Positions 1,690 through 45,700 of a stretch of 64,000 nt of DNA are shown piece after piece. How positions within the stretch are numbered: position 1 is the stretch's first letter; each line of letters begins with the position of its first letter. Origin of the DNA: Dendrobates tinctorius (taxonomy: Eukaryota); assembly GCF_039654945.1 (NCBI RefSeq), contig NW_027361863.1, positions 9,362,001 to 9,426,000 of the forward strand, in the 5' to 3' direction. The notes under the pieces were generated by a model. That model worked only from the letters and a program-made list of their open reading frames with translations. It was not told the origin of the DNA and searched no databases. The position numbers and the translations under genes are program-made.

Positions 1690-3910
1690 ATGTCTTCTTC
1701 TGGATCGACCTATTCGCCATCTCGGCAAGAAGTGGCCCAAGCAGATCGAGAGGTGAGACTCTTGCTGCCTTTGGGTAAGTTTAGCTGCTGCATCTAGAAA
1801 TGTGTAATAATTTTTTTTTCTTTACAGACATCGGGCAGTGAAGGTGAAGTGCGGGAGCAGTCTGAGCGGGAGCAGGCTAGCCAAGTCGCGGCGAGGAGAC
1901 GCAATGTAAGTATAGAGTCATTCAAATTTTTTTTTTTCTGTCTTTATTTTCATCTTCTATATTGCTTCTTCTCAGTTTCTTTTTCTATCTTTTTCATTCT
2001 CCAAAATTACAAAGATTCTAATTTTTTTTTTATTTTTTTCTATGTATCACAACGGGATGACGAAGACGTTTACATCGACAACGAGCACCTGATCCGCCTT
2101 GTTGAGGAGCGTATCCCGTTGTGGGACAGCCGTGACCAGCAGTACAAATACACAGTGGTGTCCCGGCAGCTCGGTAATAAGGTGGCCGCAGAGATGATGG
2201 ATGGCTGGGACAGCGCCTCTGCAGCTTCAAAAAGGGCGTTCAGTAAGTATAAAGATGCTCTGTGATACTGCATTTTATTTTTGGTCCTGATGGTAGTGGT
2301 GTGTTTGTTGCAAGATATATTCTTGCATCAAACACACCAATGCCTTCTGGAAAAACAGTGATTGCTTTGTGTATTGAACTGCTGTCTTGAATCTGGTTTT
2401 ATTTTTGGTCCTGATGGTACAGGTGTGTTTGTGGCAAGATATATTCTTGCATCAAACACACCAATGTCTTCTGGAAAAACAGTGTTTGCTTTGTGTATTG
2501 AACTGCTGTCTTGAATCTGGTTTTATTTTTGGTCCTGATGGTACAGGTGTGTTTGTGACAAGATATATTCTTACATCAAACACACCAATGCCTTCTGGAA
2601 AAACAGTGATTGCTTTGTGTATTGAACTGCAGTATTGATCTTGCTTTCACTCTTGCTCCTGATGATACTGTTGTGTTTGCTGCTAGATATATTCTATATT
2701 CCAGCGGCAGAGGGCCTTGGACAGGCCTGTCTTGCACCAGTTTATGCACTTGAGCGAGGCCTTTCATGCCAGCCTCAAGTCGCTGTCCGACAGAGTGGAA
2801 GGCGGTTTTTCACTCATGGAACATGGTTTTAACCACATGGAACACCGCTTCCACTCTGTCGACCAGCATTTCGAGCGTCTGGAGGCCGACCTCAACAGAC
2901 CAGCGCACCATTTTTTCAGTAAAATTGAACAGGGCATGGCGGAACACCTTAGTCATGAGCAACAGCTGCGTGTGTTTCAGGCCTGCAACACTGCTTACTT
3001 GCAGGCTATGCAGCAGAATCGGTATGTGCAGCAGTCAGTGGTTTCATTTCCAACAGTGCCACCGCTGACTCGCTACACCTCCCTACCGACTTCTGCTGCA
3101 TACCACTGCACGGCCACCTGCATTCCCAGCGGAGCCGGACACCACTACACCACCCCAAGTCCGAATGCTGCCGGACACTCCGCCGCCGCCACCACCACTA
3201 CGGCAAGCGCTGCTCCTGTATGGAGCACCACCACCGCCACTGCACCACCTGCTTGGAGCAATGCCACCACAGAACCTGCTTGGGCTACCAACACCTATTA
3301 TTATGTTCAGAGTACTGCCACCATTTCTCCGTCTAGGAGCACCGACACCACCACTCAACATCATCAAAGGAGCACCGCCAGCACTACTCATCAAAGGAGC
3401 ACAGCCAGCACTCCTCATCAAAGGAGCACAGCCAGCACTCCTCATCAAAGGAGCACCGCCACCACTCCTCATCCAAAGAGCACCGCCACCAATTCTTCTC
3501 CTAGGAGTCCTGCCAGAACCTCTCCTGCTCGGATCACCGACACGTATCCTCCTTCTAGGAGCACGGACACGACTTTGTCTCCAAAGATCACCGCCACCGC
3601 GACTTCTTTGAGCACCGACACGAGTTTGTCTCCTTGTATCACCTCCACCGCCGCCACTTCTATGAGCACCGACACAACTTTGTCTCCTTCTAGGAGCACC
3701 GCCACTGCCACTCCTAGGAGCACCGCCACCGCAGAGCATCAGAGGGGTGACCCACATTCCCTTTTTCAGGTCAACGCCACGGTCCACCAGCTCAAGGAGG
3801 TCGAGCAATGTAAGGCGGTCACACAGTGGAAGTCGGTCCAGTCAGGATACTCCTACGCCAAAGAAAAAAAAAAAAAAGACTTTGTTTGTCCATCCACCCT
3901 CTCCTCTTAA
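1690..3910 (+). pseudogene. Harbinger accessory Myb/SANT-like (MADF) gene, multi-exon, decayed
   Basis: Exons 1690-1752, 1828-1905 and ~2044-2243 (IDNEHLIRLVEERIPLWDSRD, MADF N-terminus; its acceptor reads tat instead of tag), then a last exon from ~2705 with a Thr/Ser/Pro-rich tail. The exon carrying the WxSxRDRF helix appears to be missing. Confidence 0.7.
2273..2635. repeat. ~124-bp tandem repeat, about 3 copies, in the MADF intron
   Basis: ttttggtcctgatggta...gtattgaactgc recurs three times. Confidence 0.85.
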
Positions 3911-4862: not shown

Positions 4863-6074
4863 GCATAGAGGATGGTGTTGAGTGCAAGGCATATCTATTG
4901 TTACCTTGCCATTTTTTTTTTGTTACCATCATCATTTAACTATTTTTGAGACAAGGCAAGGGGATTGTAGATATACCTAGTAATTAACAACATACTCTAT
5001 TTAAGTGTGTGGAATAAACTGATGACCTGATGGTGAAAATAAATGTTATATTTACTTCACCAATACCCTGGCCTTGTATCATCATCACTATCACACCTGG
5101 GCAGGTGAATACACATGAGTTTTAACCTGCAGCGTTGCTTAAGTCTCCATATATTTGAAGCAGACTGTATAGATGCTGCAGTTTAAGTAATATGTGTATT
5201 GTAATGCCCATGCGTGATAACTTTGTGAACTCAATATGCGTTATACACCAGGCCTAGGTATGGTAGAAGTTGTATAAACTCTATTATGTCTCCAGTGTGC
5301 GTTCAAACTCAAGCCACAGTGGTGATCCTACAAATAATATTGTTAGGAATGACGGAACGCACTAAATAAAAATAATAAAGTGCGTTCGCCGCTCGGGGTC
5401 CACCGTGCAGTAGGTGATATATAACCGCTGCTAAGTGGTGACAGGAGCAATATGGCGGAAAAGCGCTCAGGGTTAAACTTCACCCAAGTGCGCAGAGCAA
5501 TCTCAGTTAATTCACAGAGATGCCAAATAAGTACAAACCCAAAAGACTGAGCATGTTGAGGTCACAGTACTCAGTAAAAACGCATACATGGTATCAGGTC
5601 ACAGGAGTAGCCCAAGACGGCGGCACTACGTCCGTCTAGACCTACCGTCTGTGCGGCGTCGCAACTGCGGACGCAAAGGGGCTGCTACTGCAGCGCGGCG
5701 TGGACAATGCCGCTAAACGACAAAGCTATGACGCAAGCGCAATGTCGGACGCTAGCAGCTCCTCATGTTGCAGCAGAGGAGCGCTGGCTCTAACTCAGTC
5801 CCTAACCACATACGTAATATCAGAGGGAAGGGGTTTTTTAATGAGTTATTGACCAGAATCATACATCCGTCCTCATACACACAGCAGCAAGTAAGTCTAT
5901 ACTAGTGCATGGCGGAACAGCCATGCACGCCTTTTATAGCAGCCGGGACCTTCCACAAGCTTCCAGATCTCTGAGATGGACCAATGAGATCTGGAGTGGG
6001 ACCTGAGCACGACTCCCGATCTCCAATGGGAGATCGTCCCATGAGCATGCTCAATAGGAGGACAGAAGGACTTA

Positions 6075-9019
6075 AGCCCCAGTTACACATAGCGATATCG
6101 CTAGCAATATCGCTATAAAGTCACCGATTTTGTGACGTAGCAGCGATATTGCTAGCGATATCGCTACATGTGATACTTACCCCCGACAGGCTCCCCCGCT
6201 GGTTATCGCTGATCGCGCGAAAACGTCCTGGACCATTTCTCGTCGTCAGCTTCCTGCTGGGCTTCCTGTGGCGCCGACGAGCGACGCGAGGACGTCAGGA
6301 TCGCCGCATCTGACGCATCATTGGGGGACACAGCACCCTCCCATGTTTTACAGCTCCTGTTCTTACTTTGGTTGAATGGTTACAGTTGAGTTGTTTATGT
6401 TGTCAACCTATTCTGTTACTTCTCCTACTGCTTTCTCACTAACCGAGGAATTCTCTGCCGGTCGGTGGGGTGTACACTGCGGAGGAGGAGCTAACCTTTT
6501 TTTGTGCATAGTGTCAGCCTCCTAGTGGCAGCAGCATACACATACTTACACACAGACGGCGACAACCCTGGCACACGGTGCAAACACGTTTCCTGCAGCG
6601 GTGCTCCAGGTGCGCCGAACGTCTGTGGAGAAAATCCAATCTACACGAAGATTTCATCCATTTTAAGTTTATACTTAGAACATACAACACTGCCCTTTAC
6701 CTCTCCAAACAAACCTATTTCAACACCCTCATCACCTCACTGTCCAATAACCCGAAACGTCTCTTTGACACTTTTCATTCTCTACTCAATCCAAGAGTAC
6801 AGGCCCCAACCACGGAGCTCCGAGCTGACGATCTGGCCAATTACTTCAAAGAAAAAATTGACCAGATCCGACAGGAAATTATCTCCAAATCCCCTCATAC
6901 CATGCACTGTCCTCCCTCCACCACTGCATCTAACTCACTCTCTGATTTTGAACCAGTCACAGAAGAAGAAGTAAGCAGGCTCCTTGCATCTTCTCGCCCA
7001 ACTACTTGCACCAGTGACCCATTTCCGTCACATCTCCTCCAGTCCCTTTCCCCTGCTGTCACCCCTCACCTAACTAAAATATTTAACCTCTCTCTCTCTT
7101 CTGGTATTTTTCCCTCCTCATTTAAGCATGCCATCATACATCCACTACTTAAAAAACCATCCCTCGACCAAAACTGTGCCGCTAACTATAGACCTGTCTC
7201 TAATCTTCCCTTCATGTCTAAACTCCTGGAACGCCTTATCCACTCCCGTCTTATCCGCTATCTCTCAGAAAACTCTGTTCTCGACCCTCTCCAATCCGGT
7301 TTCCGCTCTTTACACTCCACTGAAACTGCCCTCACTAAAGTCTTTAATGATCTGCTAACAGCTAAATCAAATGGTCATTACTCCATGCTAATTCTCTTGG
7401 ATCTCTCTGCAGCATTCGACACTGTGGATCATCAGCTCCTCCTCACTATGCTCCATTCCATTGGCCTCAAGGACACCGTTCTCTCCTGGTTCTCCTCCTA
7501 TCTCTCCGACCGCTCCTTTACTGTTTCTTTTGCCGGTTCCTCCTCCTCTCACCTTCCCCTTACTGTTGGGGTTCCTCAAGGATCGGTTCTAGGCCCCCTC
7601 CTCTTCTCCTTGTACACTGCCCCTATTGGTCAAACAATCAGTAGATTTGGTTTCCAGTACCATCTCTATGCTGATGACACCCAATTATACGCTTCTTCTC
7701 CTGACATCACGCCAGCCTTTCTAGAAAACACTGGCGATTGTGTAAACGCTGTGTCTAACATCATGTCCTCACTATATCTGAAACTGAACCTGTCAAAGAC
7801 TGAACTCCTGGTGTTTCCTCCCTCTACTAATGTACCTATACCCGACATTGCTATTTCTGTGTGTGGTTCCACTATTACTCCCCAGCAACAGGCCCGCTGT
7901 CTTGGGGTCATACTTGATTCCGAGCTTTCCTTTGCCCCCCACATTCGATCACTGGCTTGCTCTTGTCATCTGCACCTCAAAAACATTTCTAGAATTCGAC
8001 CTTTTCTTACTTTTGACTCTGCAAAAACTCTTACTGTTTCTCTTATTCATTCTCGTCTCGACTATTGTAACTCTCTTCTAATCGGTCTCCCTCTTACCAA
8101 ACTCTCCCCTCTCCAATCTGTCTTGAATGCTGCAGCCAGGATCATATTCCTCACCAATCGTTACACCGATGCCTCTACCTTGTGCCAGTCATTACACTGG
8201 CTACCCATCCACTCCAGAATTCAGTATAAACTTATTACCCTCACCCACAAAGCCCTCCATGGCTCAGCACCACCCTACATCTTATCCCTTGTTTCAGTAT
8301 ACCACCCTACCCGCGCCCTCCGTTCTGCTGATGACCTGAGGTTGGTATCCTCAATAGTCAGAACCTCCCACTCCCGTCTCCAAGACTTTACACGTGCCGC
8401 GCCAATTCTTTGGAATGCACATCCCAGGTCAATACGATTAGTCCCCAATCCCCACAATTTTAAGCGTGTCCTGAAAACGCATTTATTCAGACTGGCCTAT
8501 CGCCTCAACACATTAACCTAACCTATCCCTGTGTGGCAGAGCCAAAAGTTTTACCATAACCAGGTTCCCAGCATCATGTTCCCACATGCTTTATGCATCC
8601 ATTAGCCCTCTGTGTCTGTACTGTTACACACTTAACATTATGGCTGGTCCATACAATCAGCGCAACTGTTACCACCCACCTTTCGTGTCTACCTCTTTCC
8701 TTATAGACTGTAAGCTTGCGAGCAGGGCCCTCATTCCTCTTGTTATTTGTTATAATCTACTGTACGTGATTATTGTTATGCTGTAATGTCTATTGTCTGT
8801 ACAAATCCCCTCTGAAATGTAAAGTGCTGCGGAATATGTCGGCGCTATAAAAATAAAATGTATTATTATTATCTGACAGGTAAGTAGCGACCACCGACCC
8901 CAGCGATGTCGCTGGTGAGATCTGCCTGTGTGGCAGCTCACTAGCGACCACTTAGCGATGCACCAGGGATCCATATCGTTGTCGGGATCGCTGGTGCATC
9001 GCTAATTGTAACGGTACCC
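6075..9019. mobile_element. Harbinger-type MITE (agcgatatcgct family) interrupted by an L2 insertion
   Basis: TTA TSD; collinear with the copy at 30197-31219. Confidence 0.8.
6545..8870 (+). mobile_element. 5'-truncated L2 LINE with an open 647-aa RT frame (6578-8521), 3' UTR and (TAT)n tail
   Basis: [35 protein letters not shown] and SRLDYCN motifs; L2-type 3' end aaagtgctgcggaatatgtcggcgctata followed by tattattatt. Confidence 0.95.
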
Positions 9020-9493: not shown

Positions 9494-10460
9494 TTATACC
9501 ATTTGCTCTTGCCATTCCACCCGGCCTACATCCAAGATGAAGTAGGCCGCAAATTGGTCCCTCATTTGGCCAACTTCAACCGATGACCTGAGAGGGTGCT
9601 GAGTAAATTCACGCAATGGGTTAGGAGCAACATCATCAAGATCTAAGTTCGGGTGCTCTCTAACCATGACAAAATTATGTAGAACCACACAGGCCTTCAC
9701 CACCTCATCCACTCTTTCCAGTTTTAGATTAATGGCTGTGGCGAGAATGCGCCATCTGGAGACAAGAATATCGAAGGCACACTCTACTGTTCTTGTGGCC
9801 CTGGTCAGCCTGTAATTAAAAATTCTTTTGGTGTGGTCCAAGTTCCGGCTGGAGTAGGGCTTGAGCATGTTTTGGCAAATCTGGAATGCTTCATCACCAA
9901 CCATTACAAAGGGCTGTGGCGGACCTTCGGTGTTGGGAAGACGCCGTGGCATGGGAAAATTAAATTGGTTGCCGTACAATCTCCTGCCCATGTCAGAGTT
10001 CTTAAAGGCCTGGGAGTCATTCCCACGGCCAAACGCCCCAATGTCCACTGCTACAAACATACAGTCTGCAACCGAAATGGCCATGAGTACTGTAGAAAAG
10101 TACTTTTTATAGTTGTAGTACTCCGATCCAGTTCTTTTGGATGTGTTTCCCATCCACCGCTCCCAAACAGTTGGGGAAATTGCAGACTGTCCAGAATTTT
10201 TCGGCGATTTCCAACCACTTTTCTGCGGTGGGCAGGGGCATGAATTCTGGACAAAGAACGCTACAATTACAGACAAGGTGGATATTCCAATACGGTACTG
10301 GAAGTGGAGTGAAGAGAGGGTCTCTCCAGTAGCCAGGAATCTGGGAAACAAAGAAAAAACAACAATTATTACTTCTGTATATGGATTTTTAAAACACCAA
10401 CAATAAATAAAAAAAAAAAGTTAATAAAAATTCATCTGCAGCCTTTTGTTCATTGCATGC

Positions 10461-10495
<35 letters not shown>

Positions 10496-10950
10496 GCAGC
10501 TCTTTGTTAGATACATGGCAGAACTATAATTCTGCCAGATTTGTAATAGTACATGTCACAACAAAGAAAATTCTGCAGGCATTGGTTTTGCAATACTATG
10601 TACCGTAATGTAACCAGTAGCCGTTCCTCAGGAGGAATCGCACGCCGGAGCTGCGTGTCCTGTCTCCGGATGACTTCTTGGACCCGACCAAGCAAATCGT
10701 TAAAGCTTTGTTGGGTCGTCCGGGTATAATCTGTAAATTTCTCCGGGTTTGTGTGTAGCTCACTGTAGAGGGTGTGGTACGCTCCACGTTTCTCCCGGAG
10801 TTCAAGAATCGGATGTATCCACAAAAGCCACCGCTGCCGTCTTCGCTGCCTCTTTCTCTCCCTCTGTTCATGGCAAGCAACGGCATAAACCTGAGCCGTC
10901 CTCATGTCCAGATCCAAGTCAAAGTAAAAACTCTTCCAGCGCAGATCCAT
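9494..10950 (-). pseudogene. Harbinger (HARBI1-like) DDE transposase, 2 exons (10950-10604, 10340-9494), disrupted
   Basis: LRRAIPPEERLLVTLR/FLATGE, YYNYKKYFS, VGDEAF, FNYRL.RA.RTVECAF motifs; GT-AG intron in phase 2; the DGKH region is frameshifted or deleted. Confidence 0.9.
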
Positions 10951-12517
10951 GTTTCTCAAGGAAAATGCAAGCAAATGTGAAGAATTCAGCTGTAAACAGG
11001 GGCTAGATAAAGAATTTCCATAAGACACGCCCACTGCTGTCCCATTGGTGGAGTGTGTTGCAAGAATTTTTCAAGGATTTTTTCTCCTGTGAAAGTGACA
11101 TCATTGCGCATAAAAAATGCAAACGCATAAAAACGCTGCGATTTTTTGTCGTGATGCGCAGAAAAATGCTACAAAAAAACAGTGTTTGCACGTGCTTTTG
11201 ACATGCGTTTCATGTGCGCTCGATACGTTGCGCAAAAAAAGGCGCAAGTGTGAAAGTAGCCTTACTCCAACAGTCCCCGTCACTCCTATGGCGACTTTTT
11301 TTGAGCTCCTTGCTAGTCTCTACTTTGTGGTCTCTGTAGACATAAATATGTGACTGCTGCTGGAAGTTAATTGGCTGCAGCGCTGCAGTGATTGGCTGCA
11401 GCGCTTATATGTCTGGGTCAACAAGTCATTGCAGCGTGGAGTGGAGTGTTGGTGAAGAATTAAAAGGCTGAAAATTCAAATCCCGCAGATCACTTGAAAT
11501 TTGTCAGAAAATTGGAATTGTAGCAAATTGTTTCAGTGTAAATTACATTTATATAAAAAAAACCTCCAGACCTTAGAGCATAATAAAAGTAAAACTAAGA
11601 AAATTTACACCTTTCTCTGGCTCTCACCTTGTTTGCACAGCTCCCCCCACTTGGTCGTTCTTGTCTTCATTCACAGGCGGATGGTATTTTTCACCTTGGG
11701 GTCTGCCAGGTTTTCAACACTTCTGGGCCCGGTGGCACAAGCGATGTAATGATCCCGCATCAAGCTTAGACTGGTTAGATGATGACTGTGGAGAAAAGAG
11801 TACTGATTTTTTTTTTTTTTTTAACCTCTTTCTGAACACAGCAAAATTGCATCCGGGTGATGTTTTGCTGCATCTGTGAGAATGGAAAAAAAAAAATTGG
11901 ATTCCAGTGAATGCTATTTTTTGTAAAATACATGGAAGAATTTGATTCGCTGATCTCCACTAGCTGAGTCTGTCTTCATTGATTATTTTTTATCATTCTC
12001 AGAGGTTTTCAGAATCGTTTTCCGGCTGGACGACCCGATAAATCTGTGCATGAACCATCGTCCTCATGGTGGGCTGAGAAGCAATTCAGGGGTCACATTG
12101 ATCTGTGATGTTATAAAGGAGCTAAGTGTTCTGGTAATTACTCTTTCATGTCTTGCTTTTTAATCGTTCTGACAAACTACACTTGATTTTACGAGTACAA
12201 ACACATGGGCCATGCACACAGCAAACATGTCGGTAGGACAGTGTTCACACCACCAAGAGACTGAAACACAGAGAAACACAGTACAACAAACGTGAAAAAA
12301 CACTCTGATGTAAAAAAAAAAAAATCTAACAGTAAACAGCCAGTGCTAGTAAAAAGATGATAACAAAACGGTATTTACTTGATACATTTTTTGCTAATAA
12401 TGTATACTAAGCCACTCTACCAGATATCAAGGTATACCCATCAGAGCAGTTCGATCCAATGTATTTAAAACCTGACCATGTGAATAGTACCTATAAACAA
12501 ACAGAATAAACGAGTTA

Positions 12518-12953
12518 GGCAGGAGTCACACTAGCGAAAAAATCGGACGAATGCAATGCAAAAAAAAATCGCATTGCATTCGTCCCAATGTTATTCTATG
12601 GTGCAGCTCCCATCATCCGATTTTTTTGTCGGAACATTTCCTCGGACCGAGACAATCGCAGCATGCTGCTGATCGGACTCGCCAATGCAAGTCTATGAGT
12701 GCGATTAAAAATCGGATTACAAATACAAACAGACCACAAGTGTGACTTGCGATAAAATCGCAAGACTTCTCCAGGTCAACAGGAAAGAGCATCAGGCATT
12801 GGCATTGGATGTCAATTGGATGCTTACATGCGAATAAAATCGGTTCATCGCCGGAAATTCGGATGACAGATGGATCCCTGGACAAGAATTCTTTGTGCGA
12901 TTTCGTACCGTAAAAATCGGATTGATTTTTAATGGTTGTGTGTGACTCCGGCC
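12518..12953. mobile_element. Harbinger-type MITE
   Basis: ggcaggagtcacac / gtgtgactccggcc; TTA/TAA flanks. Confidence 0.75.
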
Positions 12954-13095
12954 TAACGAGGAAGGAACTGAAACTGTGAAAATGCTCTATATTGTGAATG
13001 AAACCTTCATCAAGTTGTGTGCCCGCTATTGACTATACATTATTCCCACCATTTTCCACCCCTCTCGTGAGCCATGCACATATAAAGACGTCTTA

Positions 13096-13526
13096 GGCTA
13101 GTTTCACATTAGCGTTTACGGCCGCGTCGGGCTTCGCACGGCCGCAGCTAAGCCCTGCCCCCCTGCTGCGCCTCCGCCGGTAGCTCCGCCTACGGGCGCA
13201 CGACGCTGCATGCGTCGTGCGCCCCCTATCTTTAGCACTGGGGACGCAGGCCGTGCGCAGTATGCTTTGGCGGCGCGTGCGTCCTTTTGACAGTGCACCG
13301 AGCGCACCAAATTGCTACAGGTTGCGTTTGGCGCTGGTCGGCGCACCGTCAAAAGGACGCATGCGCCACCAAACGCTGGCCTGCGTCCCCAGTGCTAAAG
13401 ATAGGGGACGCAGGATGCATGCAGCGTCTTGCGCCCGTAGGCGAAGCTACCGGCGGAGGCGTGGGGCTTAGCAGCGGCCGTGCGCAGCCCGATGCTGCGG
13501 CCGTAAACGCTAATGTGAAACTAGCC
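13096..13526. mobile_element. Harbinger-type MITE, palindromic over almost its full length
   Basis: ggctagtttcacattagcgtttacggccgc / gcggccgtaaacgctaatgtgaaactagcc; TTA TSD. Confidence 0.9.
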
Positions 13527-13949
13527 TTACACAGCGTGTCCACATCAGACATTATCTTTCTGAATCCTGCTCATATAGGTACTGTTCACATGGTCAGGTT
13601 TTAAATACATTGGTTAGGACTGCTCTGAGATGTGTATACCTTGATGTTTGGTAGAGTGGCTTAGTATACATTTTTTTTTGCAAAAAACGTATCAACTAAA
13701 TACCCTGCTTTGTTATCTTTTTACTAGCACTTGCTGTTTATTGTTAGATATTTTTTTACAGGAGAGTATTTTTTCAAGTTTGTTGTACTGTGTTTCTCTG
13801 TTTCACTTGATTTTAAGAGCAGACAGAAATTTTTGACCGGAAACAGATGAGAAATGAGTACACCTGTCTACAACAGCAGAACATACTGTACTGAGATATG
13901 TGATCAGCAAGAACATAAAGGTATTCACTGGGAGGGAACAACTGTATAC

Positions 13950-14165
13950 CAGCCGTCCATAGAACTGACGGGTGAAGTAAAAGAACGACAATCAGGTGAC
14001 AATGGCCCGTGTCAGGGGTGGGACATAAGCATTTGAGGTGTTGGGGAAAACTGAGCAAGAGCAAAAGACTGAGTGACCGCGACAAGGGGCAAATTATTAT
14101 GTCTAGAAGACCGGGTCAACGAGTAACCAAAAGGGTAGATCTTGTGGGGTGTCCCCGTTATACGG
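13950..14165 (+). mobile_element. Decayed Tc1-like transposon 5' end (transposase N-terminal HTH)
   Basis: Translates K.LSDRDKGQIIMSRRPGQRVTKRVDLVGCPRY, matching the Tc1-type N-terminus ([32 protein letters not shown]). Confidence 0.8.
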
Positions 14166-17100
14166 CAGGTCTTGTGGGGTGTTCCCGGTATACGGCAGGT
14201 CTTGTAGGGTGTTCCCAGTATATGGCAGGTCTTGAACGGTATTCCCGGTATACGGCAGGTCTTGTGGGGTGTTCCCGGTATACGACAGGTCTTGTACGGT
14301 ATTCCCGGTATATGGCAGGTCTTGTGGGGTGTTCCCGGTATATGGCAGGTCTTGTACGGTATTCCCGGTATATGGCAGGTCTTGTGGGGTGTTCCCAGTA
14401 TATGGCAGGTCTTGTACGGTATTCCCGGTATATGGCAGGTCTTGTGGGGTGTTCCCGGTGTACGGCAGGTCTTGTGGGGTGTTCCCGGTGTACGGCAGGT
14501 CTTGTGGGGTGTTCCCGGTATACAACAGGTCATGTGGGGTGTTCCCTGTATACGGCAGGTCTTGTGGGGTGTTCCCAGTGTATGGCAGGTCTTGTGGGGT
14601 GTTCCCAGTACATGACAGGTCTTGTGGGGTGTTCCCGGTATACGACAGGTCTTGTGGGGTGTTCCCGGTATACGGCAGGTCTTGTAGGGTGTTCCCGGTA
14701 TACGGCAGGTCATGTGGGGTGTTCTCGGTGTACGGCAGGTCTTGTGGGGTGTTTCCGGATACGACAGGTCTTGTGGGGTGTTCCCTGTATACGGCAGGTC
14801 TTGTAGGGTGTTCCCTGTATACGGCAGGTCTTGTGGGGTGTTCCCGGTATATGGCAGGTCTTGTGGGGTGTTTCCGGATACGACAGGTCTTGTGAGGTGT
14901 TCCCTGTATACGGCAGGTCTTGTGGGGTGTTCCCGGTATCCGGCAGGTCTTGTGGGGGTGTTTCCGGTATACGGCAGGTCTTGTGGGGTGTTCCCGGTAT
15001 ATGGCAGGTCTTGTGGGGTGTTCCCTGTATACGGCAGGTCTTGTGGGGTGTTCCCTGTATACGGCAGGTCTTGTGGGGTGTTCCCTGTATACGGCAGGTC
15101 TCGTGGGGTGTTTCCTGTATATGGCAGGTCTCGTGGGGTGTTCCCGGTATATGGCAGGTCTTGTACGGTATTCCCGGTATATGGCAGGTCTTGTGGGGTG
15201 TTCCCAGTATATGGCAGGTCTTGTACGGTATTCCCGGTATATTGCAGGTCTTTTGGGGTGTTCCCGGTGTACGGCATGTCTTGTGGGGTGTTCCCGGTAT
15301 ACAACAGGTCATGTGGGGTGTTCCCTGTATACGGCAGGTCTTGTGGGGTGTTCCCAGTGTATGGCAGGTCTTGTGGGGTGTTCCCGGTATACGACAGGTC
15401 TTGTGGGGTGTTCCCGGTATACGACAGGTCTTGTGGGGTGTTCCCGGTATACGGCAGGTCATGTGGGGTGTTCCCGGTATACGACAGGTCTTGTGGGGTG
15501 TTCCCTGTATATGGCAGGTCTTGTGGGGTGTTTCCGGTATATAGCAGGTCTTGTGGGGTGTTCCCTGTATACGGCAGGTCTTGTGGTGTGTTTCCGGTAT
15601 ACGGCAGGTCTTGTGGGGTGTTCCCTGTATACGGCAGGTCTTGTGGGGTGTTCCCTGTATACTGCAGGTCTTGTGGGGTGTTCCCTGTATACGACAGGTC
15701 TTGTGGGGTGTTCCCGGTATACGACAGGTCTTGTGGGGTGTTCCCGGTATACGGCAGGTCATGTGGGGTGTTCCCTGTATACGGCAGATCTTGTGGGGTG
15801 CTCCCTGTATACGGCAGGTCTTGTGGGGTGTTTCCGGTATATGGCAAGTCTTGTGGGGTGTTCCCTGTATACGGCAGGTCTTGTGGGGTGTTTCCGGTAT
15901 ATGGCAAGTCTTGTGGGGTGTTCCCTGTATACGGCAGGTCTTGTGGGGTGTTCCCTGTATACGGCAGGTCTTGTGGGGTGTTCCCTGTATACGGCAGGTC
16001 TTGTGGGGTTTTTCTGGTATATGGCAGGTCTTGTGGGGTGTTTCCGGTATATGGCAGGTCTGGGGGGAGTTCCCGGTATATGGCGAGTCTTGTGGGGTGT
16101 TCCCTGTATAAGGCAGGTCTTGTGGGGTGCTTCCGGTATACGGCAGGTCTTGTGGGGTGTTTCCGGTATATGGCAGGTCTGGGAGGAATTCCCGGTATAT
16201 GGCGAGTCTTGTGGGGTGTTCCCTGTATACGGCAGGTCTTGTGGGGTGCTTCCGGTATACGGCAGGTCTTGTGGGGTGTTTCCGGTATATGGCAGGTCTG
16301 GGAGGAATTCCCGGTATATGGCGAGTCTTGTGGGGTGTTCCCTGTATACGGCAGGTCTTATGGGGTGTTCCCTGTATACGGCAGGTCTTGTGGGGTGTTC
16401 CCTGTATACGGCAGGTCTTGTGGGGTGTTTCCAGTATACGGCAGGTCTTGTGGGGTGTTTCCGGTATATGGCAGGTCTTCTGGGGTGTTTCCGGTATATG
16501 GCAGGTCTGGGGGGAGTTCCCGGTATATGGCGAGTCTTGTGGGGTGTTTCCGGTATACGGCAGGTCTTGTGGGGTGTTTCCGGTATACGGCAGGTCTTGT
16601 GGGGTGTTTCCGGTATATGGCAGGCCTTGTGGGGCGTTCCCTGTACATGGCAGGTCTTGTGGGATGTTTCCGGTATACGGCAGGTCTTGTGGGGTGTTCC
16701 CTGTATACGGCAGGCCTTGTGGGGTGTTTCCGGTATACGGCAGGTCTTGTGGGGTGTTTCCGGTATACGGCAGGTCTTGTGGGGTGTTTCCGGTATACGG
16801 CAGGTCTTGTGGGGTGTTCCCGGTATACGGCAGGCCTTGTGGGGTGTTTCCGGTATACGGCAGGCCTTGTGGGGTGTTTCCGGTATACGGCAGGTCTTGT
16901 GGGGTGTTTCCGGTATACGGCAGGTCTTGTGGGGTGTTCCCTGTATACGGCAGGCCTTGTGGGGTGTTTCCGGTATACGGCAGGCCTTGTGGGGTGTTTC
17001 CGGTATACGGCAGGTCTTGTGGGGTGTTTCCGGTATACGGCAGGTCTTGTGGGGTGTTTCCGGTATACGGCAGGTCTTGTGGGGTGTTTCCGGTATACGG

Positions 17101-17506
17101 CAGGTCTTGTGGGGTGTTTCCGGTATACGGCAGGTCTTGTGGGGTGTTCCCTGTATACGGCAGGCCTTGTGGGGTGTTTCCGGTATACGGCAGGCCTTGT
17201 GGGGTGTTTCCGGTATACGGCAGGTCTTGTGGGGTGTTTCCGGTATACGGCAGGTCTTGTGGGGTGTTCCCAGTATACGGCAGGTCTTGTGGGGTGTTTC
17301 CGGTATACGGCAGGTCTTGTGGGTTGTTCCCTGTATACGGCAGGTCTTGTGGGGTGTTTCCGGTATACGGCAGGCCTTGTGGGGTGTTTCCGGTATACGG
17401 CAGGCCTTGTGGGGTGTTTCCGGTATACGGCAGGTCTTGTGGGGTTTTCCCTGTATACGGCAGGTCTTGTGGGGTTTTCCCTGTATACGGCAGGTCTTGT
17501 GGGGTG
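14139..17506. repeat. 30-bp minisatellite, ~110 units (acggcaggtcttgtggggtgttcccggtat)
   Basis: Direct inspection; it produces the long repetitive ORFs ([20 protein letters not shown]). Confidence 0.98.
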
Positions 17507-17739
17507 GTACAGGAGATGTGTGGTAATGGACGTGTATACAGTGTACGGGGTTACTGCCGCCGTGTTACTCATATACCGGGATACACGGCATTCTCCATGC
17601 TTTGTACATCGCACACAGCGGCCAGTCACTGGCTTGGCTTCCTGAGCTCCGCAGTCCGACGCACACGTGTCTGCAGCAGCTCTCGCAGGTCGCGAGAATC
17701 CATCTCCGGTCTGAGGGACTCCATCTACACAGAGCCCGC

Positions 17740-17860
17740 ATGTCCCGCCCTCTATCGCGAGGATATTCAAATTGGCCAATCAGAAATGAGAGGAAGAAGA
17801 CGGTCAACCAATAGGGGAGTAAAGAGGCGTGGCCGACTGGGCGGCGGATGATTTGAAAAC
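17740..17860 (+). promoter_or_regulatory. arhgap19: ARHGAP19 TATA-less promoter: GC box, CCAAT boxes (17776, 17808), CDE (17843-17847) and CHR (17852-17857)
   Basis: CpG-rich; cccgccc; attggccaatca and ccaatag 32 bp apart; GGCGG-atga-TTTGAA just upstream of the ATG. Confidence 0.8.
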
Positions 17861-17863
17861 AAG

Positions 17864-17910
17864 ATGGCAGAAATGGAGGGTGCGGGTGACAGAGAGCCGG
17901 GAATAAGGCG
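17864..17910 (+). CDS. arhgap19: ARHGAP19 coding exon 1 (MAEMEGAGDREPGIR-R)
   Basis: Kozak-like aagATGg; donor CG|gtgagt in phase 2, which joins exon 2 in frame; length similar to the mammalian N-terminus preceding D-A-I-C. Confidence 0.8.
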
Positions 17911-18163
17911 GTGAGTACCGAGTTGGAGCATGGCTGCCTGCCGGGTATGAGATTTCCCGTCATGGAAAGCGTTACGCAGCCGGTTACTGGAGACGTGCAT
18001 AGCGAACTGTGACACTGAAGAAAAACGCCTATAGCAGCCAATTAGAGAGCAGCTTTCATTTTTCTATAGCAGAATCGGAAATTAAAGCTGCTTTCTGACT
18101 GGCTGCGACTGGAAATAAAGTGCAGCGTTTTTCCTTATGGCATTTTTGTATTAATCTCAGTGC

Positions 18164-19095
18164 TGTGGTGACATTTCGTCTTGTGTGGTGGTGTTGTGTC
18201 GTCCTGCGCGGTAATGTGGTGACATGTCGTCTTGTGTGGCGGTGTTGTCGTCCTGCGCGGTAATGTGGTGACATGTCGTCTTGTGTGGCGGTGTTGTCGT
18301 CCTGCGCGGTAATGTGGTGACATGTCGTCTTGTGTGGTGGTGTTGTGTCGTCCTGCGCGGTAATGTGGTGACATGTCGTCTTGTGTGGCGGTGTTGTGTC
18401 GTCCTGTGTGGTAATGTGGTGACATGTCGTCTTGTGTGGCGGTGTTGTAATGTGGTGGCATGTCGTCTTGTGTGGTAATGTGGTGGCATGTCGTCTTGTG
18501 TGGCGGTGTTGTGTCGTCCTGTGCGGTTATGTGGTGACATTTCGTCTTGTGTGGTGGTGTTGTGTCGTCCTGTGTGGTAATGTGGTGACATGTCGTCTTG
18601 TGTGGCGGTGTTGTGTGGTAATGTGGTGGCATGTCGTCTTGTGTGGCGGTGTTGTGTGGTAATGTGGTGGCATGTCGTCTTGTGTGGCGGTGTTGTGTCG
18701 TCCTGCGCGGTAATGTGGTGACGTGTCGTCCTGCACGGTAATGTGGTGACGTGTTGTCTTGTGTGGCGGTGTTGTGTCGTCCTGCGCGGTAATGTGGTGA
18801 CGTGTTGTCTTGTGTGGCGGTGTTGTGTCGTCCTGCGCGGTAATGTGGTGACATGTCGTCTTGTGTGGCGGTGTTGTGTCGTCCTGCGCGGTAATGTGGT
18901 GACATGTCGTCTTGTGTGGCGGTGTTGTGTCGTCCTGCGTGGTAATGTGGTGACATGTCGTCTTGTGTGGCGGTGTTGTGTCGTCCTGCGCGGTAATGTG
19001 GTGACGTGTCGTCTTGTGTGGTGGTGTTGTGTCGTCCTGCGTGGTAATGTGGTGACATGTCGTCCTGCATGATAATGTGATGATGCGTCGTCTTG
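18164..19095. repeat. ~51-bp GT-rich minisatellite at the start of intron 1
   Basis: Unit gtaatgtggtgacatgtcgtcttgtgtggcggtgttgtgtcgtcctgcgcg with internal deletion variants. Confidence 0.95.
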
Positions 19096-38413: not shown

Positions 38414-38679
38414 TGAGGCGCTGTGCAACATAGTGATCTGTAATGATGCCTCCCTGCGGAGTCAGCCAGTTATCTACAACCCGGACTTCTTTGTGGAAAA
38501 GCTCCGACACGAGAATCCAGAAGTATTCACCGAGCTGTTGGTCAGTAACATCACAAGGTTGATAGACCTGCCCGGGACGGAGTTCGCCGAGCTCATGGGA
38601 GAAGCGGAGCCAAAACTGCCGGGACAGAACGGAGCAGCTGCTTCCTTCTTCAAGTCGCTCAACTTCCTGAAGCGTAAAG
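38414..38679 (+). CDS. arhgap19: ARHGAP19 (Rho GTPase-activating protein 19) coding exon 2
   Basis: EALCNIVICNDASLRSQPVIYNPDFFVEKLRHENPEVFTELLVSNITRLIDLPGTE...FFKSLNFLKRK matches the ARHGAP19 N-terminal region; acceptor cctttcag, donor G|gtctgt. Confidence 0.95.
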
Positions 38680-38744
38680 GTCTGTACAAATATACAGCCG
38701 TGTTAATAAAATATATACGTGGTGGGGAAAATATGCATTTCATA

Positions 38745-42748: not shown

Positions 42749-45700
42749 TGTTATGATTGAGTCACCGTAGGAGGCAAAAATAGTAATGCTAGCTAAGTCC
42801 AGAACACCAGAGAAGTTGGCAGCTATCGGATTGCAGACCCCTGAACCTATCAACACAACTAGCAGTAGCCGTGGGGGGCTCCTACGATGCCCTAGGCCCC
42901 TCGATCACAGCCGGAGGACTACATAGCCTAAAGACAGAAAAGGGAAATCTAAACTGCCCCAGAGCAGACCCCAAAGTAAAAGGCAGCCCCCAACATATAA
43001 TGACGGTGAAGCAAGAAGAAAGACTGAGCAAAGATGGGGCCCACGCTAGCTTAGATAGGAAAGGACAGGAAGGCTGCTGTCTGCAATCCATGAAAAGCCC
43101 TATGAAAATAAGAGCCAACAAACTGACAGCAAAAAAGGCCCTGAAGACGCTAGGCTTCAAAAAAGCTATGTCAGTACTCAGGAATATTCTGAAGACAGAG
43201 CAACAGGCAAAAGGAGATTCAGCTCACCCCAGCAGGGAATGGCAGAATCCAGAAAAGCAAGGAAAACAAAACACTAATGCAAAAAGGCAAAGCAGAAATC
43301 TTAGCTTTAGATGAGCAGGAATCAGACTGGTTTCCTAGAAGTCCACAGAGAAATCACCCGCAGGCCAGAAGGGCGTCGGCAGCCTTATATCCAGTCATCA
43401 ACTCCACTCAGCCAGTCATCATCATCAGCCCCATGTGTTTGACAATCAGGCTCACTACCTTTCTTCACCAGAAGAGGGAGTTCCTCGGGCCTCAGTAGTG
43501 AAGGGGAAAATGAACTCGCAACAGTACCTCCCCCTTGAGGAGGGGTCACCGAACCCTCAACCACGCCACCAGGGCGATCAGGGTGAGCCCGATGAAAGGC
43601 ACGCACCAATCTTTTGGCATGAACATCAGAGGCAGAGACCCAGGAATTATCCTCCTGACCATAACCCTTCCACTTAACCAAATACTGGAGTCTCCGTCTA
43701 GCCAGACGGGAATCCAGTACTTTCTCTACCTCATATTCCATGTTACCTTCAACCAATACAGGGTCTGGAGCTGCAACCCCCGGAACAACAGGTTCAACAA
43801 ACCTCTTCAACAAAGATTTATGGAACACATTATGGATTTTAAATGTGACAGGAAGAGCCAAACGAAAAGAGACCGGATTAATAATCTCCAAAATCTTGTA
43901 AGGTCCAATAAATCTAGGCTTAAACTTAGGAGAAGCCACCTTCATAGCAATATTTTTTGATGATAACCACACCATATCACCAACCTTAAATTGGGGACCA
44001 ATGGTCCTATGTCGGTTGGAAAACCGCTGGGCCTTTTCCTGGGAGAGAGATAACTTATCCACCACATGGTCCCAGATCTGGTGCATTCTCTCCACCACAG
44101 TGTCAACCCCTGGGCAGGCAGAGGGCTCCACCTGCCCTGAAGAAAATCGAGGATGAAACCCAAAGTTACAAAAAAAAGGAGACCTCAAAGTGGCAGAACT
44201 AGCTCTACTATTTAAAGCAAATTCGGCCAAGGGCAAAAATGAAACCCAATCCTCCTGATCAGCAGAAATAAAACATCTCAAATATGACTCCAAGGTCTGG
44301 TTTGTTCTCTGTCTGCACATTGGTCTGAGGGTGAAAAGCAGAGGAGAAGGACAACTGAATTTCCAGCTTGGAACAGAAAGTTCTCCAAAATCTAGACACA
44401 AACTGGACTCCTCTGTCAGATACAATGTTTTCAGGAATCCCGTGCAAGCGAACCACCTGTTGTAAAAACAGGGGCACCAATTCAGAGGAAGAAGGCAACT
44501 TGGGGAGTGGTACAAGATGAACCATCTTAGAGAACCTATCACAAATCACCCAAATAACAGTCATCCTTTGAGAGACAGGCATATCAGAGATGAAATCCAT
44601 TGAAATATGGGTCCATGGCCTCTTGGGGACAGGCAAAGGCATCAACAACCCACTAGAGCGAGAACACGATTTAGACCGGGAGCACGTCCCACAGGACTGC
44701 ACAAAATTCCTGACATCACGAGACAAGGAGGGCCACCAAAAAGACCGACTCACCAGATCTCTAGTACCAAAAATACCTGGATGACCAGCCAATGCAGAGC
44801 AATGAACTTCAGACATCACTCTCTTCTTCCACTGGTCAGGAACGTACAACTTTCCACTGGGACAATGCTCAGGTTTGTCCTCCTGGAACTCTTCCAGAGC
44901 ACGTCTCAAATCGGGCGAGATGGCAGAAAGAACTACCCCTTCGCCTAAGATGGTAGCAGGCTTGGTCACCACAGGAGAATCAGCAAAGAAGCTCCTAGAG
45001 AGGGCGTCCGCCTTGACATTCTTAGTTCCAGGAAGAAAAGAAACCGCAAAATCAAAACGTGTAAAAAAACAAGGCCCACCTAGCCTGTCTAGGGTTCAAG
45101 CGCTTAGCCGACTCTAGGTAAATCAAATTCTTGTGGTCAGTGAGGACCACGACTTGATGTTTAGCTCCCTCCAACCAATGTCTCCACTCCTCAAATGCCC
45201 ATTTCATGGCTAACAGTTCCCGATTCCCCACATCATAGTTACGTTCAGATGGAGAGAACTTTCGGGAAAAGAAAGCACAGGGATTCATTTTAGATGTTAC
45301 AGGATCCTTTTGGGACAAAACAGCTCCTGCACCAATCTCAGAAGCGTCCACCTCTACCTGGAACGGAAGTGAGACATCAGGTTGCCGCAAAACCGGGGCG
45401 GAGGTGAATCTTCGCTTCAGCTCCTGAAAGGAAGAAACGGCCTCCGGAGACCAATTTAACACATCAGCACCCTTCTTAGTCAAATCAGTCAATGGCTTGG
45501 CAATACTAGAAAATTTTGCTATAAATTTCCGATAAAAATTAGCAAAACCCAAAAACTTCTAGAGGGCCTTCAAAGAAGTGGGCTGAACCCAATCGTAAAT
45601 GGCCTGTACCTTGGCCGGGTCCATTTCAATAGTTGACGGAGACAAAATAAATCCCAAAAAAGAAATCCTCTGTACTCCAAAAAGGCATTTAGATCCTTTG

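What the first reader, a model, noticed from the sequence alone, without database searches (positions are those of the whole stretch)
13950..17506. Promoter-adjacent 3.4-kb minisatellite that appears to have grown out of a Tc1 transposase HTH segment
Seen: a decayed Tc1 5' end reads in frame (DKGQIIMSRRPGQ...VDLVGCPRY) directly into ~110 tandem 30-bp units. Each unit encodes [10 protein letters not shown], which I recognise as the turn and recognition-helix start of a Tc1 N-terminal HTH. The rest of the transposon is absent, and the array stops ~350 bp upstream of the ARHGAP19 ATG. Unit variants are polarised: heterogeneous at the 5' end, a homogeneous gtttccgg variant near the promoter. Each unit carries about 2 CpGs and a GGGG run. 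Inference: a 10-codon transposase segment expanded into a VNTR that may affect methylation, G-quadruplex formation or expression of a cell-cycle gene.
Basis: partly seen in the sequence, partly recalled or inferred. Interest (0 to 1): 0.75.

Follow-up and report, generated by a model that had tools for sequence, protein, structure and literature searches.

The report
Tc1-transposase-derived dispersed frog minisatellite
A real 3.4-kb tandem repeat upstream of a poison-frog ARHGAP19 gene is built from a 30-base piece of a Tc1 "jumping gene" enzyme's coding sequence, but it is one copy of a repeat family spread through several frog genomes, and nothing shows that it controls the gene.

Summary
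A 30-bp-period array of about 113 units lies at 14140-17506, with a last degenerate unit to 17523. It runs on, in register, from the decayed 5' end of a Tc1-like transposon.

The unit encodes [10 protein letters not shown]. This string occurs verbatim in a Tc1-like transposase N-terminus (P0005), inside its HTH_23 match, and the unit DNA is 27-28/30 identical to real Tc1 copies.

ARHGAP19 is confirmed. An RNA contig joins exon 1 (ATG at 17865) to exon 2 at 38414.

The "local birth at this promoter" reading is only partly right. The same unit in the same phase forms arrays elsewhere:
- In Ranitomeya imitator an array ends 54 bp before a Tc1 3' terminal repeat.
- Summed contig depth on the unit is thousands-fold above the single-copy flank in two species.

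The array therefore most likely arose once inside a Tc1 derivative, was dispersed, and grew here by unequal exchange. There is no canonical G-quadruplex motif, the mean is 1.4 CpG per unit, and there is no evidence of function. This is a new example of a known kind, transposon-derived satellites. An earlier, unchecked note of this scan reports another Tc1-derived satellite elsewhere in this genome.

The parts
13895..13925 (+). Decayed 5' terminal inverted repeat of a Tc1-like transposon. The core TGATCAGCAAGAACATAA lies at 13901-13918.
   Evidence: This is the only match in the 64-kb window to the family's terminal-repeat core (3 mismatches; 0.06 expected by chance). It aligns to the reverse complement of the L001 3' repeat (1/500 shuffles reach the score) and to the L004 5' end (7/500). 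The repeat pair of an internally deleted copy, L005 3853-3885 / 4969-5001, defines the motif.
13926..14050 (+). Remnant of the Tc1 5' untranslated region, carrying an internal deletion of about 27 nt.
   Evidence: In alignment A1, window 13975-14050 is collinear with the 5' UTRs of L003, L004 and L005.
14051..14161 (+). First 37 codons of the Tc1-like transposase. The start codon has changed from ATG to CTG at 14051. The stretch includes the boundary 'proto-unit' at 14132-14161, which differs from the array consensus at 5 of 30 positions.
   Evidence: phmmer hits P0003 and P0005-P0016. Protein alignment A2. blastn 72-75% identity, E 1e-11 to 1e-15, to L002-L005.
14140..17523 (+). 30-bp minisatellite of about 113 units, consensus TCTTGTGGGGTGTTCCCGGTATACGGCAGG. 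The last, degenerate unit is at 17495-17523.
   Evidence: TRF; unit-by-unit segmentation; composition and variant statistics.
14324..15386 (+). Internal segmental duplication of about 26-27 units. Exact repeats of 110 and 108 nt lie at offsets of 809 and 779 bp.
   Evidence: Exact-repeat scan; the same unit-variant strings recur (units 5-17 and 36-42).
16059..16535 (+). Four-unit (119-bp) higher-order repeat containing a 29-bp unit.
   Evidence: 129-nt exact repeat at offset 119.
16386..17494 (+). Homogeneous promoter-proximal third, rich in the TGTTTCCGG variant, with 4- to 7-unit higher-order blocks.
   Evidence: 26/37 units carry T at position 15 and there are 13 distinct unit types. A 193-nt exact repeat lies at an offset of 7 units.
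17524..17770 (+). Unique spacer between the array and the core promoter. It has no Tc1 homology and carries a 20-bp indel at 17688-17707 in an independent individual.
   Evidence: no homology, table 4 (indel in X5).
17771..17857 (+). Putative core promoter: ATTGG/CCAAT at 17771-17780, CCAAT at 17808-17812, and TTTGAA at 17852-17857.
   Evidence: Motif positions. The two CCAAT pentamers and the TTTGAA are unchanged in organism B, while the surrounding sequence differs at 28 of 227 positions; the ATTGG half carries a G>A at 17775 (table 3).
17865..17910 (+). Coding part of ARHGAP19 exon 1 (MAEMEGAGDREPGIR plus 2 nt). The GT donor is at 17911.
   Evidence: An RNA contig of X5 covers 17470-17910 and continues with 30 letters identical to 38414-38443.
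38414..38680 (+). ARHGAP19 exon 2 (end approximate), preceded by an AG acceptor.
   Evidence: The ORF 38388-38750 hits proteins named Rho GTPase-activating protein 19 at E 1e-35 to 1e-37.

Best explanation
This is one locus of a dispersed minisatellite family of poison frogs. Its 30-bp unit is a 10-codon piece (T28-Y37 of relatives such as P0005) of the first helix-turn-helix coding segment of a Tc1-like transposase.

Shown:
- At this locus the array is still joined in register to the decayed 5' end of its parent element, namely the terminal repeat, the 5' UTR and 37 codons. The 3' part of the element is missing.
- The unit's own consensus is closer to intact Tc1 copies (27-28/30) than the boundary proto-unit is (25/30).
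- The same unit in the same phase forms arrays at another locus in Ranitomeya imitator, where the array ends 54 bp before a Tc1 3' terminal repeat.
- Summed contig depth on the unit is thousands of times that of the single-copy flank.

Inferred:
- A short tandem duplication arose once in a young Tc1 copy or an internally deleted derivative. The duplicated segment is bounded by only 2-4 nt of microhomology.
- The array-bearing derivative was spread, most simply by transposition in trans.
- Each array then evolved locally by replication slippage and unequal exchange. Here this left large internal block duplications and a recently homogenised third next to the gene.
- A deletion or truncation removed the 3' end and left the array 342-358 bp from the ARHGAP19 start codon.
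- The array is most likely neutral repetitive DNA, probably methylated in the germline, since 44 of 226 unit variants are CpG to TpG/CpA changes.
For: - Array and structure.
- Tc1 homology of flank and unit: one search gave 13 Tc1-like N-termini at E 3e-5 to 5.6e-4 against 1.84e9 proteins. One search shows P0005 carries [10 protein letters not shown]. One search gives alignment A2. One search shows, for P0005, HTH_23 at residues 10-52 (28.6 bits, cut-off 24.6) and HTH_32 above their curated cut-offs, with HTH_Tnp_Tc3_2 below cut-off (27.6 bits, cut-off 31.5), and DDE_3 for P0012. Searches give DNA identity of 72-75% at E down to 1e-15, with a following unit hit separately by L002 at 90%. One search shows collinearity with the 5' UTRs.
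- Terminal repeat.
- Second locus: (P0004 = R. imitator CAJ0949330.1, locus L001). Searches show arrays at 9912-10601 and 11362-12031 with identical unit phase. One search finds an exact terminal-repeat core at 12085-12102 on the minus strand. One search finds 0/500 shuffles reaching the score against the L005 3' repeat. Flanks are otherwise unrelated to the window.
- Abundance and species spread: table 2, summed depth on the last unit is 35,884 against 4.92 single-copy in X1, and 508,124 against 20.5 in X6. In one search, organisms B-G hold 0.2-0.27 of the sampled words.
- Absence of the Tc1 3' part.
- Junction reality: an X1 contig matches 17477-18160 with 0 differences, and an independent X5 contig covers 17470-17910.
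Against: - Only two loci could be read, and neither has both terminal repeats around the array. Mobilisation as a Tc1 derivative is therefore inferred, not shown.
- The summed-depth ratio is explicitly not a copy number, so it gives only an order of magnitude.
- The interior of the array could not be checked against reads. The reads tool turns away long repeats, so only the 3' junction was laid.
- This locus could in principle be the founder.
- An RNA contig runs from the last array unit through the promoter into exon 2. Some transcription across the boundary, and hence some influence on the gene, is not excluded.
Confidence: 0.75

Rival explanations
1. Local birth. The 10-codon segment of this particular Tc1 insertion expanded in place upstream of ARHGAP19. 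Arrays elsewhere are either descendants of this locus or independent expansions.
For: The array is in perfect register with the parental coding sequence here. The boundary unit is the most diverged, as expected for an old in-place array.
Against: - An array with the same unit phase lies in R. imitator next to the opposite Tc1 end, with unrelated flanks.
- The depth excess is thousands-fold in two species.
- The units lack the private substitutions of this copy's flank: the proto-unit differs at 5/30 positions, while the unit consensus is 27-28/30 identical to other Tc1 copies.
- Independent expansions would not share the same junction.
Confidence: 0.1
2. Functional promoter-proximal repeat. 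Array length or methylation tunes ARHGAP19 transcription. One route would be the TTTCCGG variant (CCGGAA on the other strand, an ETS-type core), which is repeated 35 times and concentrated next to the promoter.
For: - The array ends about 250 bp from the first CCAAT box.
- The variant is enriched in the proximal third, and CpG observed/expected rises from about 0.5-0.6 mid-array to 0.87-0.88 at 17000-17400, near the promoter.
- An RNA contig is continuous from the last unit into the spliced exons.
Against: - No expression, methylation or polymorphism data are available.
- The family is dispersed, so its position here is probably incidental.
- In organism B the 106 nt upstream of the homologue of 17532 did not lay on the array end (contig 26). 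The adjacency may therefore be lineage-specific.
- There is no canonical G-quadruplex motif.
- Homogenisation near one edge is what unequal exchange alone produces.
Confidence: 0.07
3. Assembly artefact. The array, or most of its length, results from mis-assembly of a dispersed repeat.
For: The unit is highly repeated genome-wide, which makes mis-joins possible. The interior could not be checked with reads.
Against: - The 3' junction is present in contigs of the probable source sample (0 differences over 17477-18160) and of an independent individual.
- The 5' junction is a biologically coherent continuation of Tc1 coding sequence.
- The array has an ordered internal structure of variant blocks and higher-order repeats rather than collapsed identical units.
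Confidence: 0.03

Closest known systems
miDNA4 of Xenopus (Scalvenzi and Pollet), as summarised in PMC12628747 and PMC9659126
   Same: It is a frog Tc1/mariner-type non-autonomous element that carries an internal satellite present as one to many tandem copies, so that arrays are dispersed with the element.
   Different: [quoted passage not shown] Here the unit is a piece of the transposase's own coding sequence. No copy with both terminal repeats around the array was seen here.
Satellite DNAs derived from transposable-element coding regions, listed in PMC9659126 Table 1. Examples are CficCl-61-40 from the CACTA element Jozin Tnp2 transposase, PROsat and Pvc20 from LINE-1 ORF2, and HinfI from CR1 ORF2.
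   Same: A fragment of a mobile element's open reading frame became the monomer of a tandem array.
   Different: Those monomers are mostly longer and come from other superfamilies. In the papers I could search I found no Tc1 HTH-coding segment reported as a minisatellite unit.
Satellite-like arrays carried by non-autonomous Helentrons in the Pacific oyster (PMC7492417), and the Tetris foldback element of Drosophila virilis (PMC4079207)
   Same: Short tandem arrays are dispersed through a genome because they ride inside DNA transposons, and they can later expand.
   Different: The transposon superfamily and mechanism differ. Here transposon-borne spread is inferred from two half-elements only.

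Membership tests
Tc1/mariner (Tc1-like) DNA transposon | Terminal inverted repeat of the family at the element's end | tested here: met
   The window has a single hit at 13901-13918 (3 mismatches; 0.06 expected by chance), placed just upstream of the UTR homology. The motif is defined by the L005 repeat pair.
Tc1/mariner (Tc1-like) DNA transposon | Transposase with an N-terminal paired-like HTH | tested here: met
   The first 37 codons align to 13 Tc1-like N-termini. The relatives carry HTH_23 and HTH_32 above cut-off, HTH_Tnp_Tc3_2 below cut-off, and DDE_3. The window fragment itself is too short for Pfam.
Tc1/mariner (Tc1-like) DNA transposon | DDE catalytic domain and a 3' terminal repeat | tested here: not met
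   There is no Tc1 homology after the array or elsewhere nearby. This is a 5' fragment, not an element.
Tc1/mariner (Tc1-like) DNA transposon | TA target-site duplication | tested here: inconclusive
   A TA lies at 13895-13896 next to the repeat remnant, but with no 3' end there is nothing to pair it with.
Transposon-derived minisatellite / satellite DNA | Head-to-tail array of a 10-100 bp unit | tested here: met
   Period 30, 112.4 copies, 90% matches.
Transposon-derived minisatellite / satellite DNA | Unit homologous to an internal segment of a defined transposon | tested here: met
   The unit is 27/30 identical to L002 and 28/30 to L004 at the homologous position. [10 protein letters not shown] is verbatim in P0005.
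Transposon-derived minisatellite / satellite DNA | Physical continuity with the parent element | tested here: met
   blastn alignments run from 14044 into the first unit (to 14163).
Satellite-carrying non-autonomous Tc1 element (miDNA4-like) | Array enclosed by both terminal repeats in one copy, with a target duplication | tested here: not met
   The window has only the 5' end, and L001 only the 3' end, 54 bp after the array. A genome-wide census was not possible with these tools.
Satellite-carrying non-autonomous Tc1 element (miDNA4-like) | Many dispersed copies | tested here: inconclusive
   Depth excess of about 7,000-fold (X1) and 25,000-fold (X6) over single copy, and a second locus in another species. 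However, summed depth is not a copy number, and the flanks of other copies were not seen.
Regulatory promoter VNTR / G-quadruplex repeat | Canonical G-quadruplex motif (four runs of G3 or more, loops up to 7-12) | tested here: not met
   There are 0 matches in the array. Only weak two-tetrad G2 patterns occur.
Regulatory promoter VNTR / G-quadruplex repeat | Length polymorphism linked to expression or methylation | not testable with these tools
   Runs are held as k-mer contigs that cannot span the array, and the reads tool does not accept long repeats.

The most novel reading that the evidence does not exclude
The promoter-proximal third of the array has been homogenised for a unit variant (TGTTTCCGG) that creates an ETS-type CCGGAA core on the opposite strand. 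This gives about 35 evenly spaced sites within 1.1 kb of a CCAAT/CHR-type cell-cycle promoter. On this reading the array acts as a length-variable transcription-factor platform, or as a methylation buffer, for ARHGAP19.
Probability: 0.05. Interest if true: 0.6.

Novelty: new member of a known kind. Interest (0 to 1): 0.3.

Why it matters
It is a clean, sequence-level example of how a minisatellite family is born. The parent element, the exact 10-codon segment, the boundary proto-unit and later block duplications are all still readable, and the family appears to have been spread through poison-frog genomes. Such cases help explain why these very large frog genomes are so rich in minisatellites. 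As it stands it does not bear on ARHGAP19 regulation. It also exposes an annotation artefact: an R. imitator gene model whose C-terminus is translated minisatellite.

Tried and rejected
- Pfam on the window fragment gave no family.
- The word-index protein search gave nothing with the flank and nothing with the 265-aa array ORF.
- Two top phmmer hits (P0001, P0002) are low-complexity repeats unrelated to Tc1 and were discarded.
- A possible 3' terminal repeat after the array was tested. The inverted match 13941-13960 / 17526-17546 is reached by 11/300 shuffles. The 3' flank does not match the L001 or L005 3' ends or any Tc1 locus. Rejected.
- Degenerate units beyond 17523 or before 14110 score no better than shuffles. 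Rejected.
- My first placement of the terminal repeat at about 13924, taken from the MAFFT alignment, was wrong. Searches place it at 13901-13918.
- A metagenome scan for the exact two-unit pattern gave 0 hits.
- A PDB sequence search with P0005 gave nothing meaningful.
- AlphaFold on P0005 with a 12-row alignment gave an N-terminus at pLDDT below 50, so helix positions were not obtained.
- The findings index by sequence was blank.
- Supplements of the CHR paper are not held.
Only 17470-18160 was laid.
- Exons were searched singly by reference.
Full report
**1. What is there**

Tandem Repeats Finder reports a single array at 14140-17506 with period 30, 112.4 copies, 90% matches and consensus TCTTGTGGGGTGTTCCCGGTATACGGCAGG. 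A wrap-around alignment to that consensus resolves about 113 units and a last degenerate unit at 17495-17523. Eight one-base indels (seven deletions and one insertion) shift the register, so the 'reading frame' is not kept and the array has no coding potential. The unit does not occur elsewhere in the window. No degenerate units lie beyond either edge.

**2. Variant structure**

By thirds of the array:
- The TGTTTCCGG variant occurs in 4/37, 10/38 and 26/37 units.
- Distinct unit types number 24, 23 and 13.

Growth was by blocks:
- Exact repeats of 110 and 108 nt lie 26-27 units apart in the 5' half.
- A four-unit, 119-bp higher-order repeat lies at 16059-16535.
- A 193-nt exact repeat lies at an offset of seven units in the 3' third.

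Composition:
- The consensus unit has two CpGs, but the mean is 1.43 per unit, with CpG observed/expected 0.68.
- 79 of 226 differences from consensus fall on the four CpG positions, and 44 of them are CpG to TpG/CpA.
- GGGG runs number 98.
- There is no canonical G-quadruplex motif.

**3. Origin of the unit**

Frame +1 upstream reads GKLSKSKRLSDRDKGQIIMSRRPGQRVTKRVDLVGCPRY and then [10 protein letters not shown] units. Pfam and the word-index search saw nothing in this short, decayed piece.

An exhaustive phmmer search of 1.84 billion representatives with window:14045-14191 gave 16 hits at E below 1e-3:
- Two are unrelated low-complexity proteins.
- Thirteen are N-termini of the type MGK.[35 protein letters not shown].YQKW.
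- One, P0004, is discussed in section 5.

P0005 contains [10 protein letters not shown] verbatim at residues 28-37, inside its Pfam HTH_23 match (residues 10-52; 28.6 bits against a cut-off of 24.6). P0005 also matches HTH_32 above its cut-off and HTH_Tnp_Tc3_2 below it (27.6 bits against 31.5). P0012 carries DDE_3. These are therefore Tc1-like transposases.

At the DNA level, window 14044-14163 aligns to four independent copies (L002-L005) at 72-75% identity, with E 1e-11 to 1e-15, and the alignments run into the first unit. The unit consensus is 27/30 identical to L002 and 28/30 to L004 at the homologous place. The start codon of the remnant is CTG at 14051.

It could not be verified here, because the AlphaFold model of P0005 has pLDDT below 50 over residues 1-42.

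**4. Extent of the parent element**

Alignment A1 shows collinearity of 13975-14050 with the 5' UTRs of L003-L005. An internally deleted copy in L005 has the terminal repeat pair 3853-3885 / 4969-5001. The core of that repeat (TGATCAGCCATAACATTA) has exactly one match in the window, at 13901-13918 on the + strand. It has three mismatches, and 0.06 matches are expected by chance. It aligns to the other copies' ends better than nearly all shuffles do.

After the array there is no Tc1 sequence. A candidate inverted match was not significant.

**5. The array is not private to this locus**

The sixteenth phmmer hit, P0004, is a Ranitomeya imitator gene model (CAJ0949330.1). It is named a gypsy integrase-like protein, and its C-terminal ~130 residues are this minisatellite translated. 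Its locus L001 has arrays at 9912-10601 and 11362-12031 with the same unit and the same unit junction. A 760-bp insertion splits them.

The flanks of L001 are unrelated to the window's. However, 54 bp after the array lies an exact copy of the terminal-repeat core in 3' orientation, at 12085-12102 on the minus strand. It matches the L005 3' repeat better than 500/500 shuffles. Two loci in two species thus keep opposite ends of a Tc1 element next to the same array.

Contigs of public runs laid on 17470-18160 give, for the last array unit, a summed depth far above that of the adjacent single-copy DNA:
- X1 (organism A): 35,884 against 4.92.
- X6 (organism B): 508,124 against 20.5.

The tool warns that this is not a copy number. 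Even so, 113 local units cannot give a ratio of thousands. Six further organism labels hold 0.2-0.27 of the sampled words of the stretch, of which 71% is array.

Earlier notes of this scan call the genome that of the dyeing poison frog. I did not check this, but it fits the R. imitator relative.

**6. Interpretation**

The shared unit phase means the tandem duplication happened once. The units lack the private substitutions of this copy's flank: the boundary proto-unit differs from the consensus at 5/30 positions. The array therefore formed while the Tc1 sequence was still near its family consensus.

The most economical history is as follows:
- A duplication of a 30-bp segment arose in a young Tc1 or an internally deleted derivative. 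The borders share only AC.G-type microhomology in L004-like sequence. This is inference.
- The derivative was dispersed.
- Each array was then remodelled locally by slippage and unequal exchange.
- At this locus the 3' end was lost, leaving the array 342-358 bp from the ARHGAP19 start codon.

Mobilisation by transposase in trans is inferred. No copy with both ends was seen.

**7. The neighbouring gene**

An RNA contig of an independent sample of the same organism (X5, depth 228) covers 17470-17910 and continues with 30 letters identical to 38414-38443, which follow an AG acceptor. Exon 1 (ATG at 17865, donor at 17911) and exon 2 are therefore spliced across a 20.5-kb intron.

The exon-2 ORF hits proteins named Rho GTPase-activating protein 19 at E about 1e-37.

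The core promoter has an ATTGG/CCAAT pair at 17771-17780, a second CCAAT at 17808, and TTTGAA at 17852. Both CCAAT pentamers and the TTTGAA are unchanged in organism B, although 28 of 227 surrounding positions differ; the ATTGG half has one change (G>A at 17775). From my own knowledge this is the CCAAT-plus-CHR layout of G2/M genes described in PMC3287175 and PMC4176359.

The X5 contig reaches the last array unit. Because contigs cannot show RNA starts, this does not place the transcription start.

In organism B, the 106 nt upstream of the homologue of 17532 did not lay on the array end (contig 26). This hints that the adjacency is lineage-specific, but it does not prove it.

**8. Assembly check**

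A contig of the probable source sample matches 17477-18160 without a difference. The independent X5 contig also crosses the junction, with a 20-bp indel at 17688-17707. The interior length remains unverified.

**9. Comparison with what is known**

Reviews list many satellites derived from mobile elements, including from coding regions, and a frog Tc1/mariner MITE (miDNA4) that carries a variable satellite (PMC9659126; PMC12628747). Dispersal of short arrays by DNA transposons is described for oyster Helentrons (PMC7492417). I found no paper describing this unit or a Tc1 HTH-derived minisatellite, but the library is partial.

An unchecked first-reader note of this scan (s1-389146) reports a satellite grown from the last codons of a Tc1 transposase elsewhere in this genome.

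**10. Verdict**

The 'promoter VNTR born here' reading is weakened, and function is unsupported. This is a new member of a known kind, of moderate-to-low interest.

Noticed in passing
window 18164-19083: A second minisatellite lies in ARHGAP19 intron 1. Its period is 51 bp (28-bp sub-period) and it has three blocks at 84-96% matches. Its CpG observed/expected is unusually high, at 1.07-1.43.
   Followed up: partly
window 12263-13801: A fold-back-like element with long inverted arms (12263-12495 / 13574-13801, 90-93% complementary) encloses two nested palindromic elements (about 12514-12957 and 13090-13532). It sits directly upstream of the Tc1 remnant.
   Followed up: partly
window 17771-17857: The ARHGAP19 core promoter has two CCAAT boxes 32 bp apart and a TTTGAA (CHR-like) 8 bp before the ATG. 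Both CCAAT pentamers and the TTTGAA are unchanged in a second species despite 12% divergence around them.
   Followed up: partly
window 17688-17707: A 20-bp indel distinguishes the assembly from an independent individual's RNA contig, upstream of the core promoter.
   Followed up: no
window 17470-17910: An RNA contig (X5) runs uninterrupted from the last array unit through the promoter into spliced exon 2. Whether this reflects upstream transcription starts or read-through, or only low-level background joined by the assembler, is unexplained.
   Followed up: partly
L001 6001-10754 (R. imitator CAUEEQ010030008.1): The gene model CAJ0949330.1 ('Gypsy retrotransposon integrase-like protein 1') ends in about 130 residues of translated minisatellite. 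This is probably an annotation artefact.
   Followed up: partly
L001 7795-8868, 12761-13638, 13636-15699, 16455-16751: The R. imitator array sits in a cluster of unrelated minisatellites (periods 35, 25, 29 and 12/24 bp). A 760-bp insertion (10602-11361) splits the 30-bp array.
   Followed up: no
window 6578-8521, 9494-10351, 43385-44542, 46120-47553: Other mobile-element ORFs are present: a reverse transcriptase (RVT_1), a DDE_Tnp_4 (Harbinger-type) transposase, a chromodomain integrase, and a gag-protease of a Gypsy-type element.
   Followed up: partly
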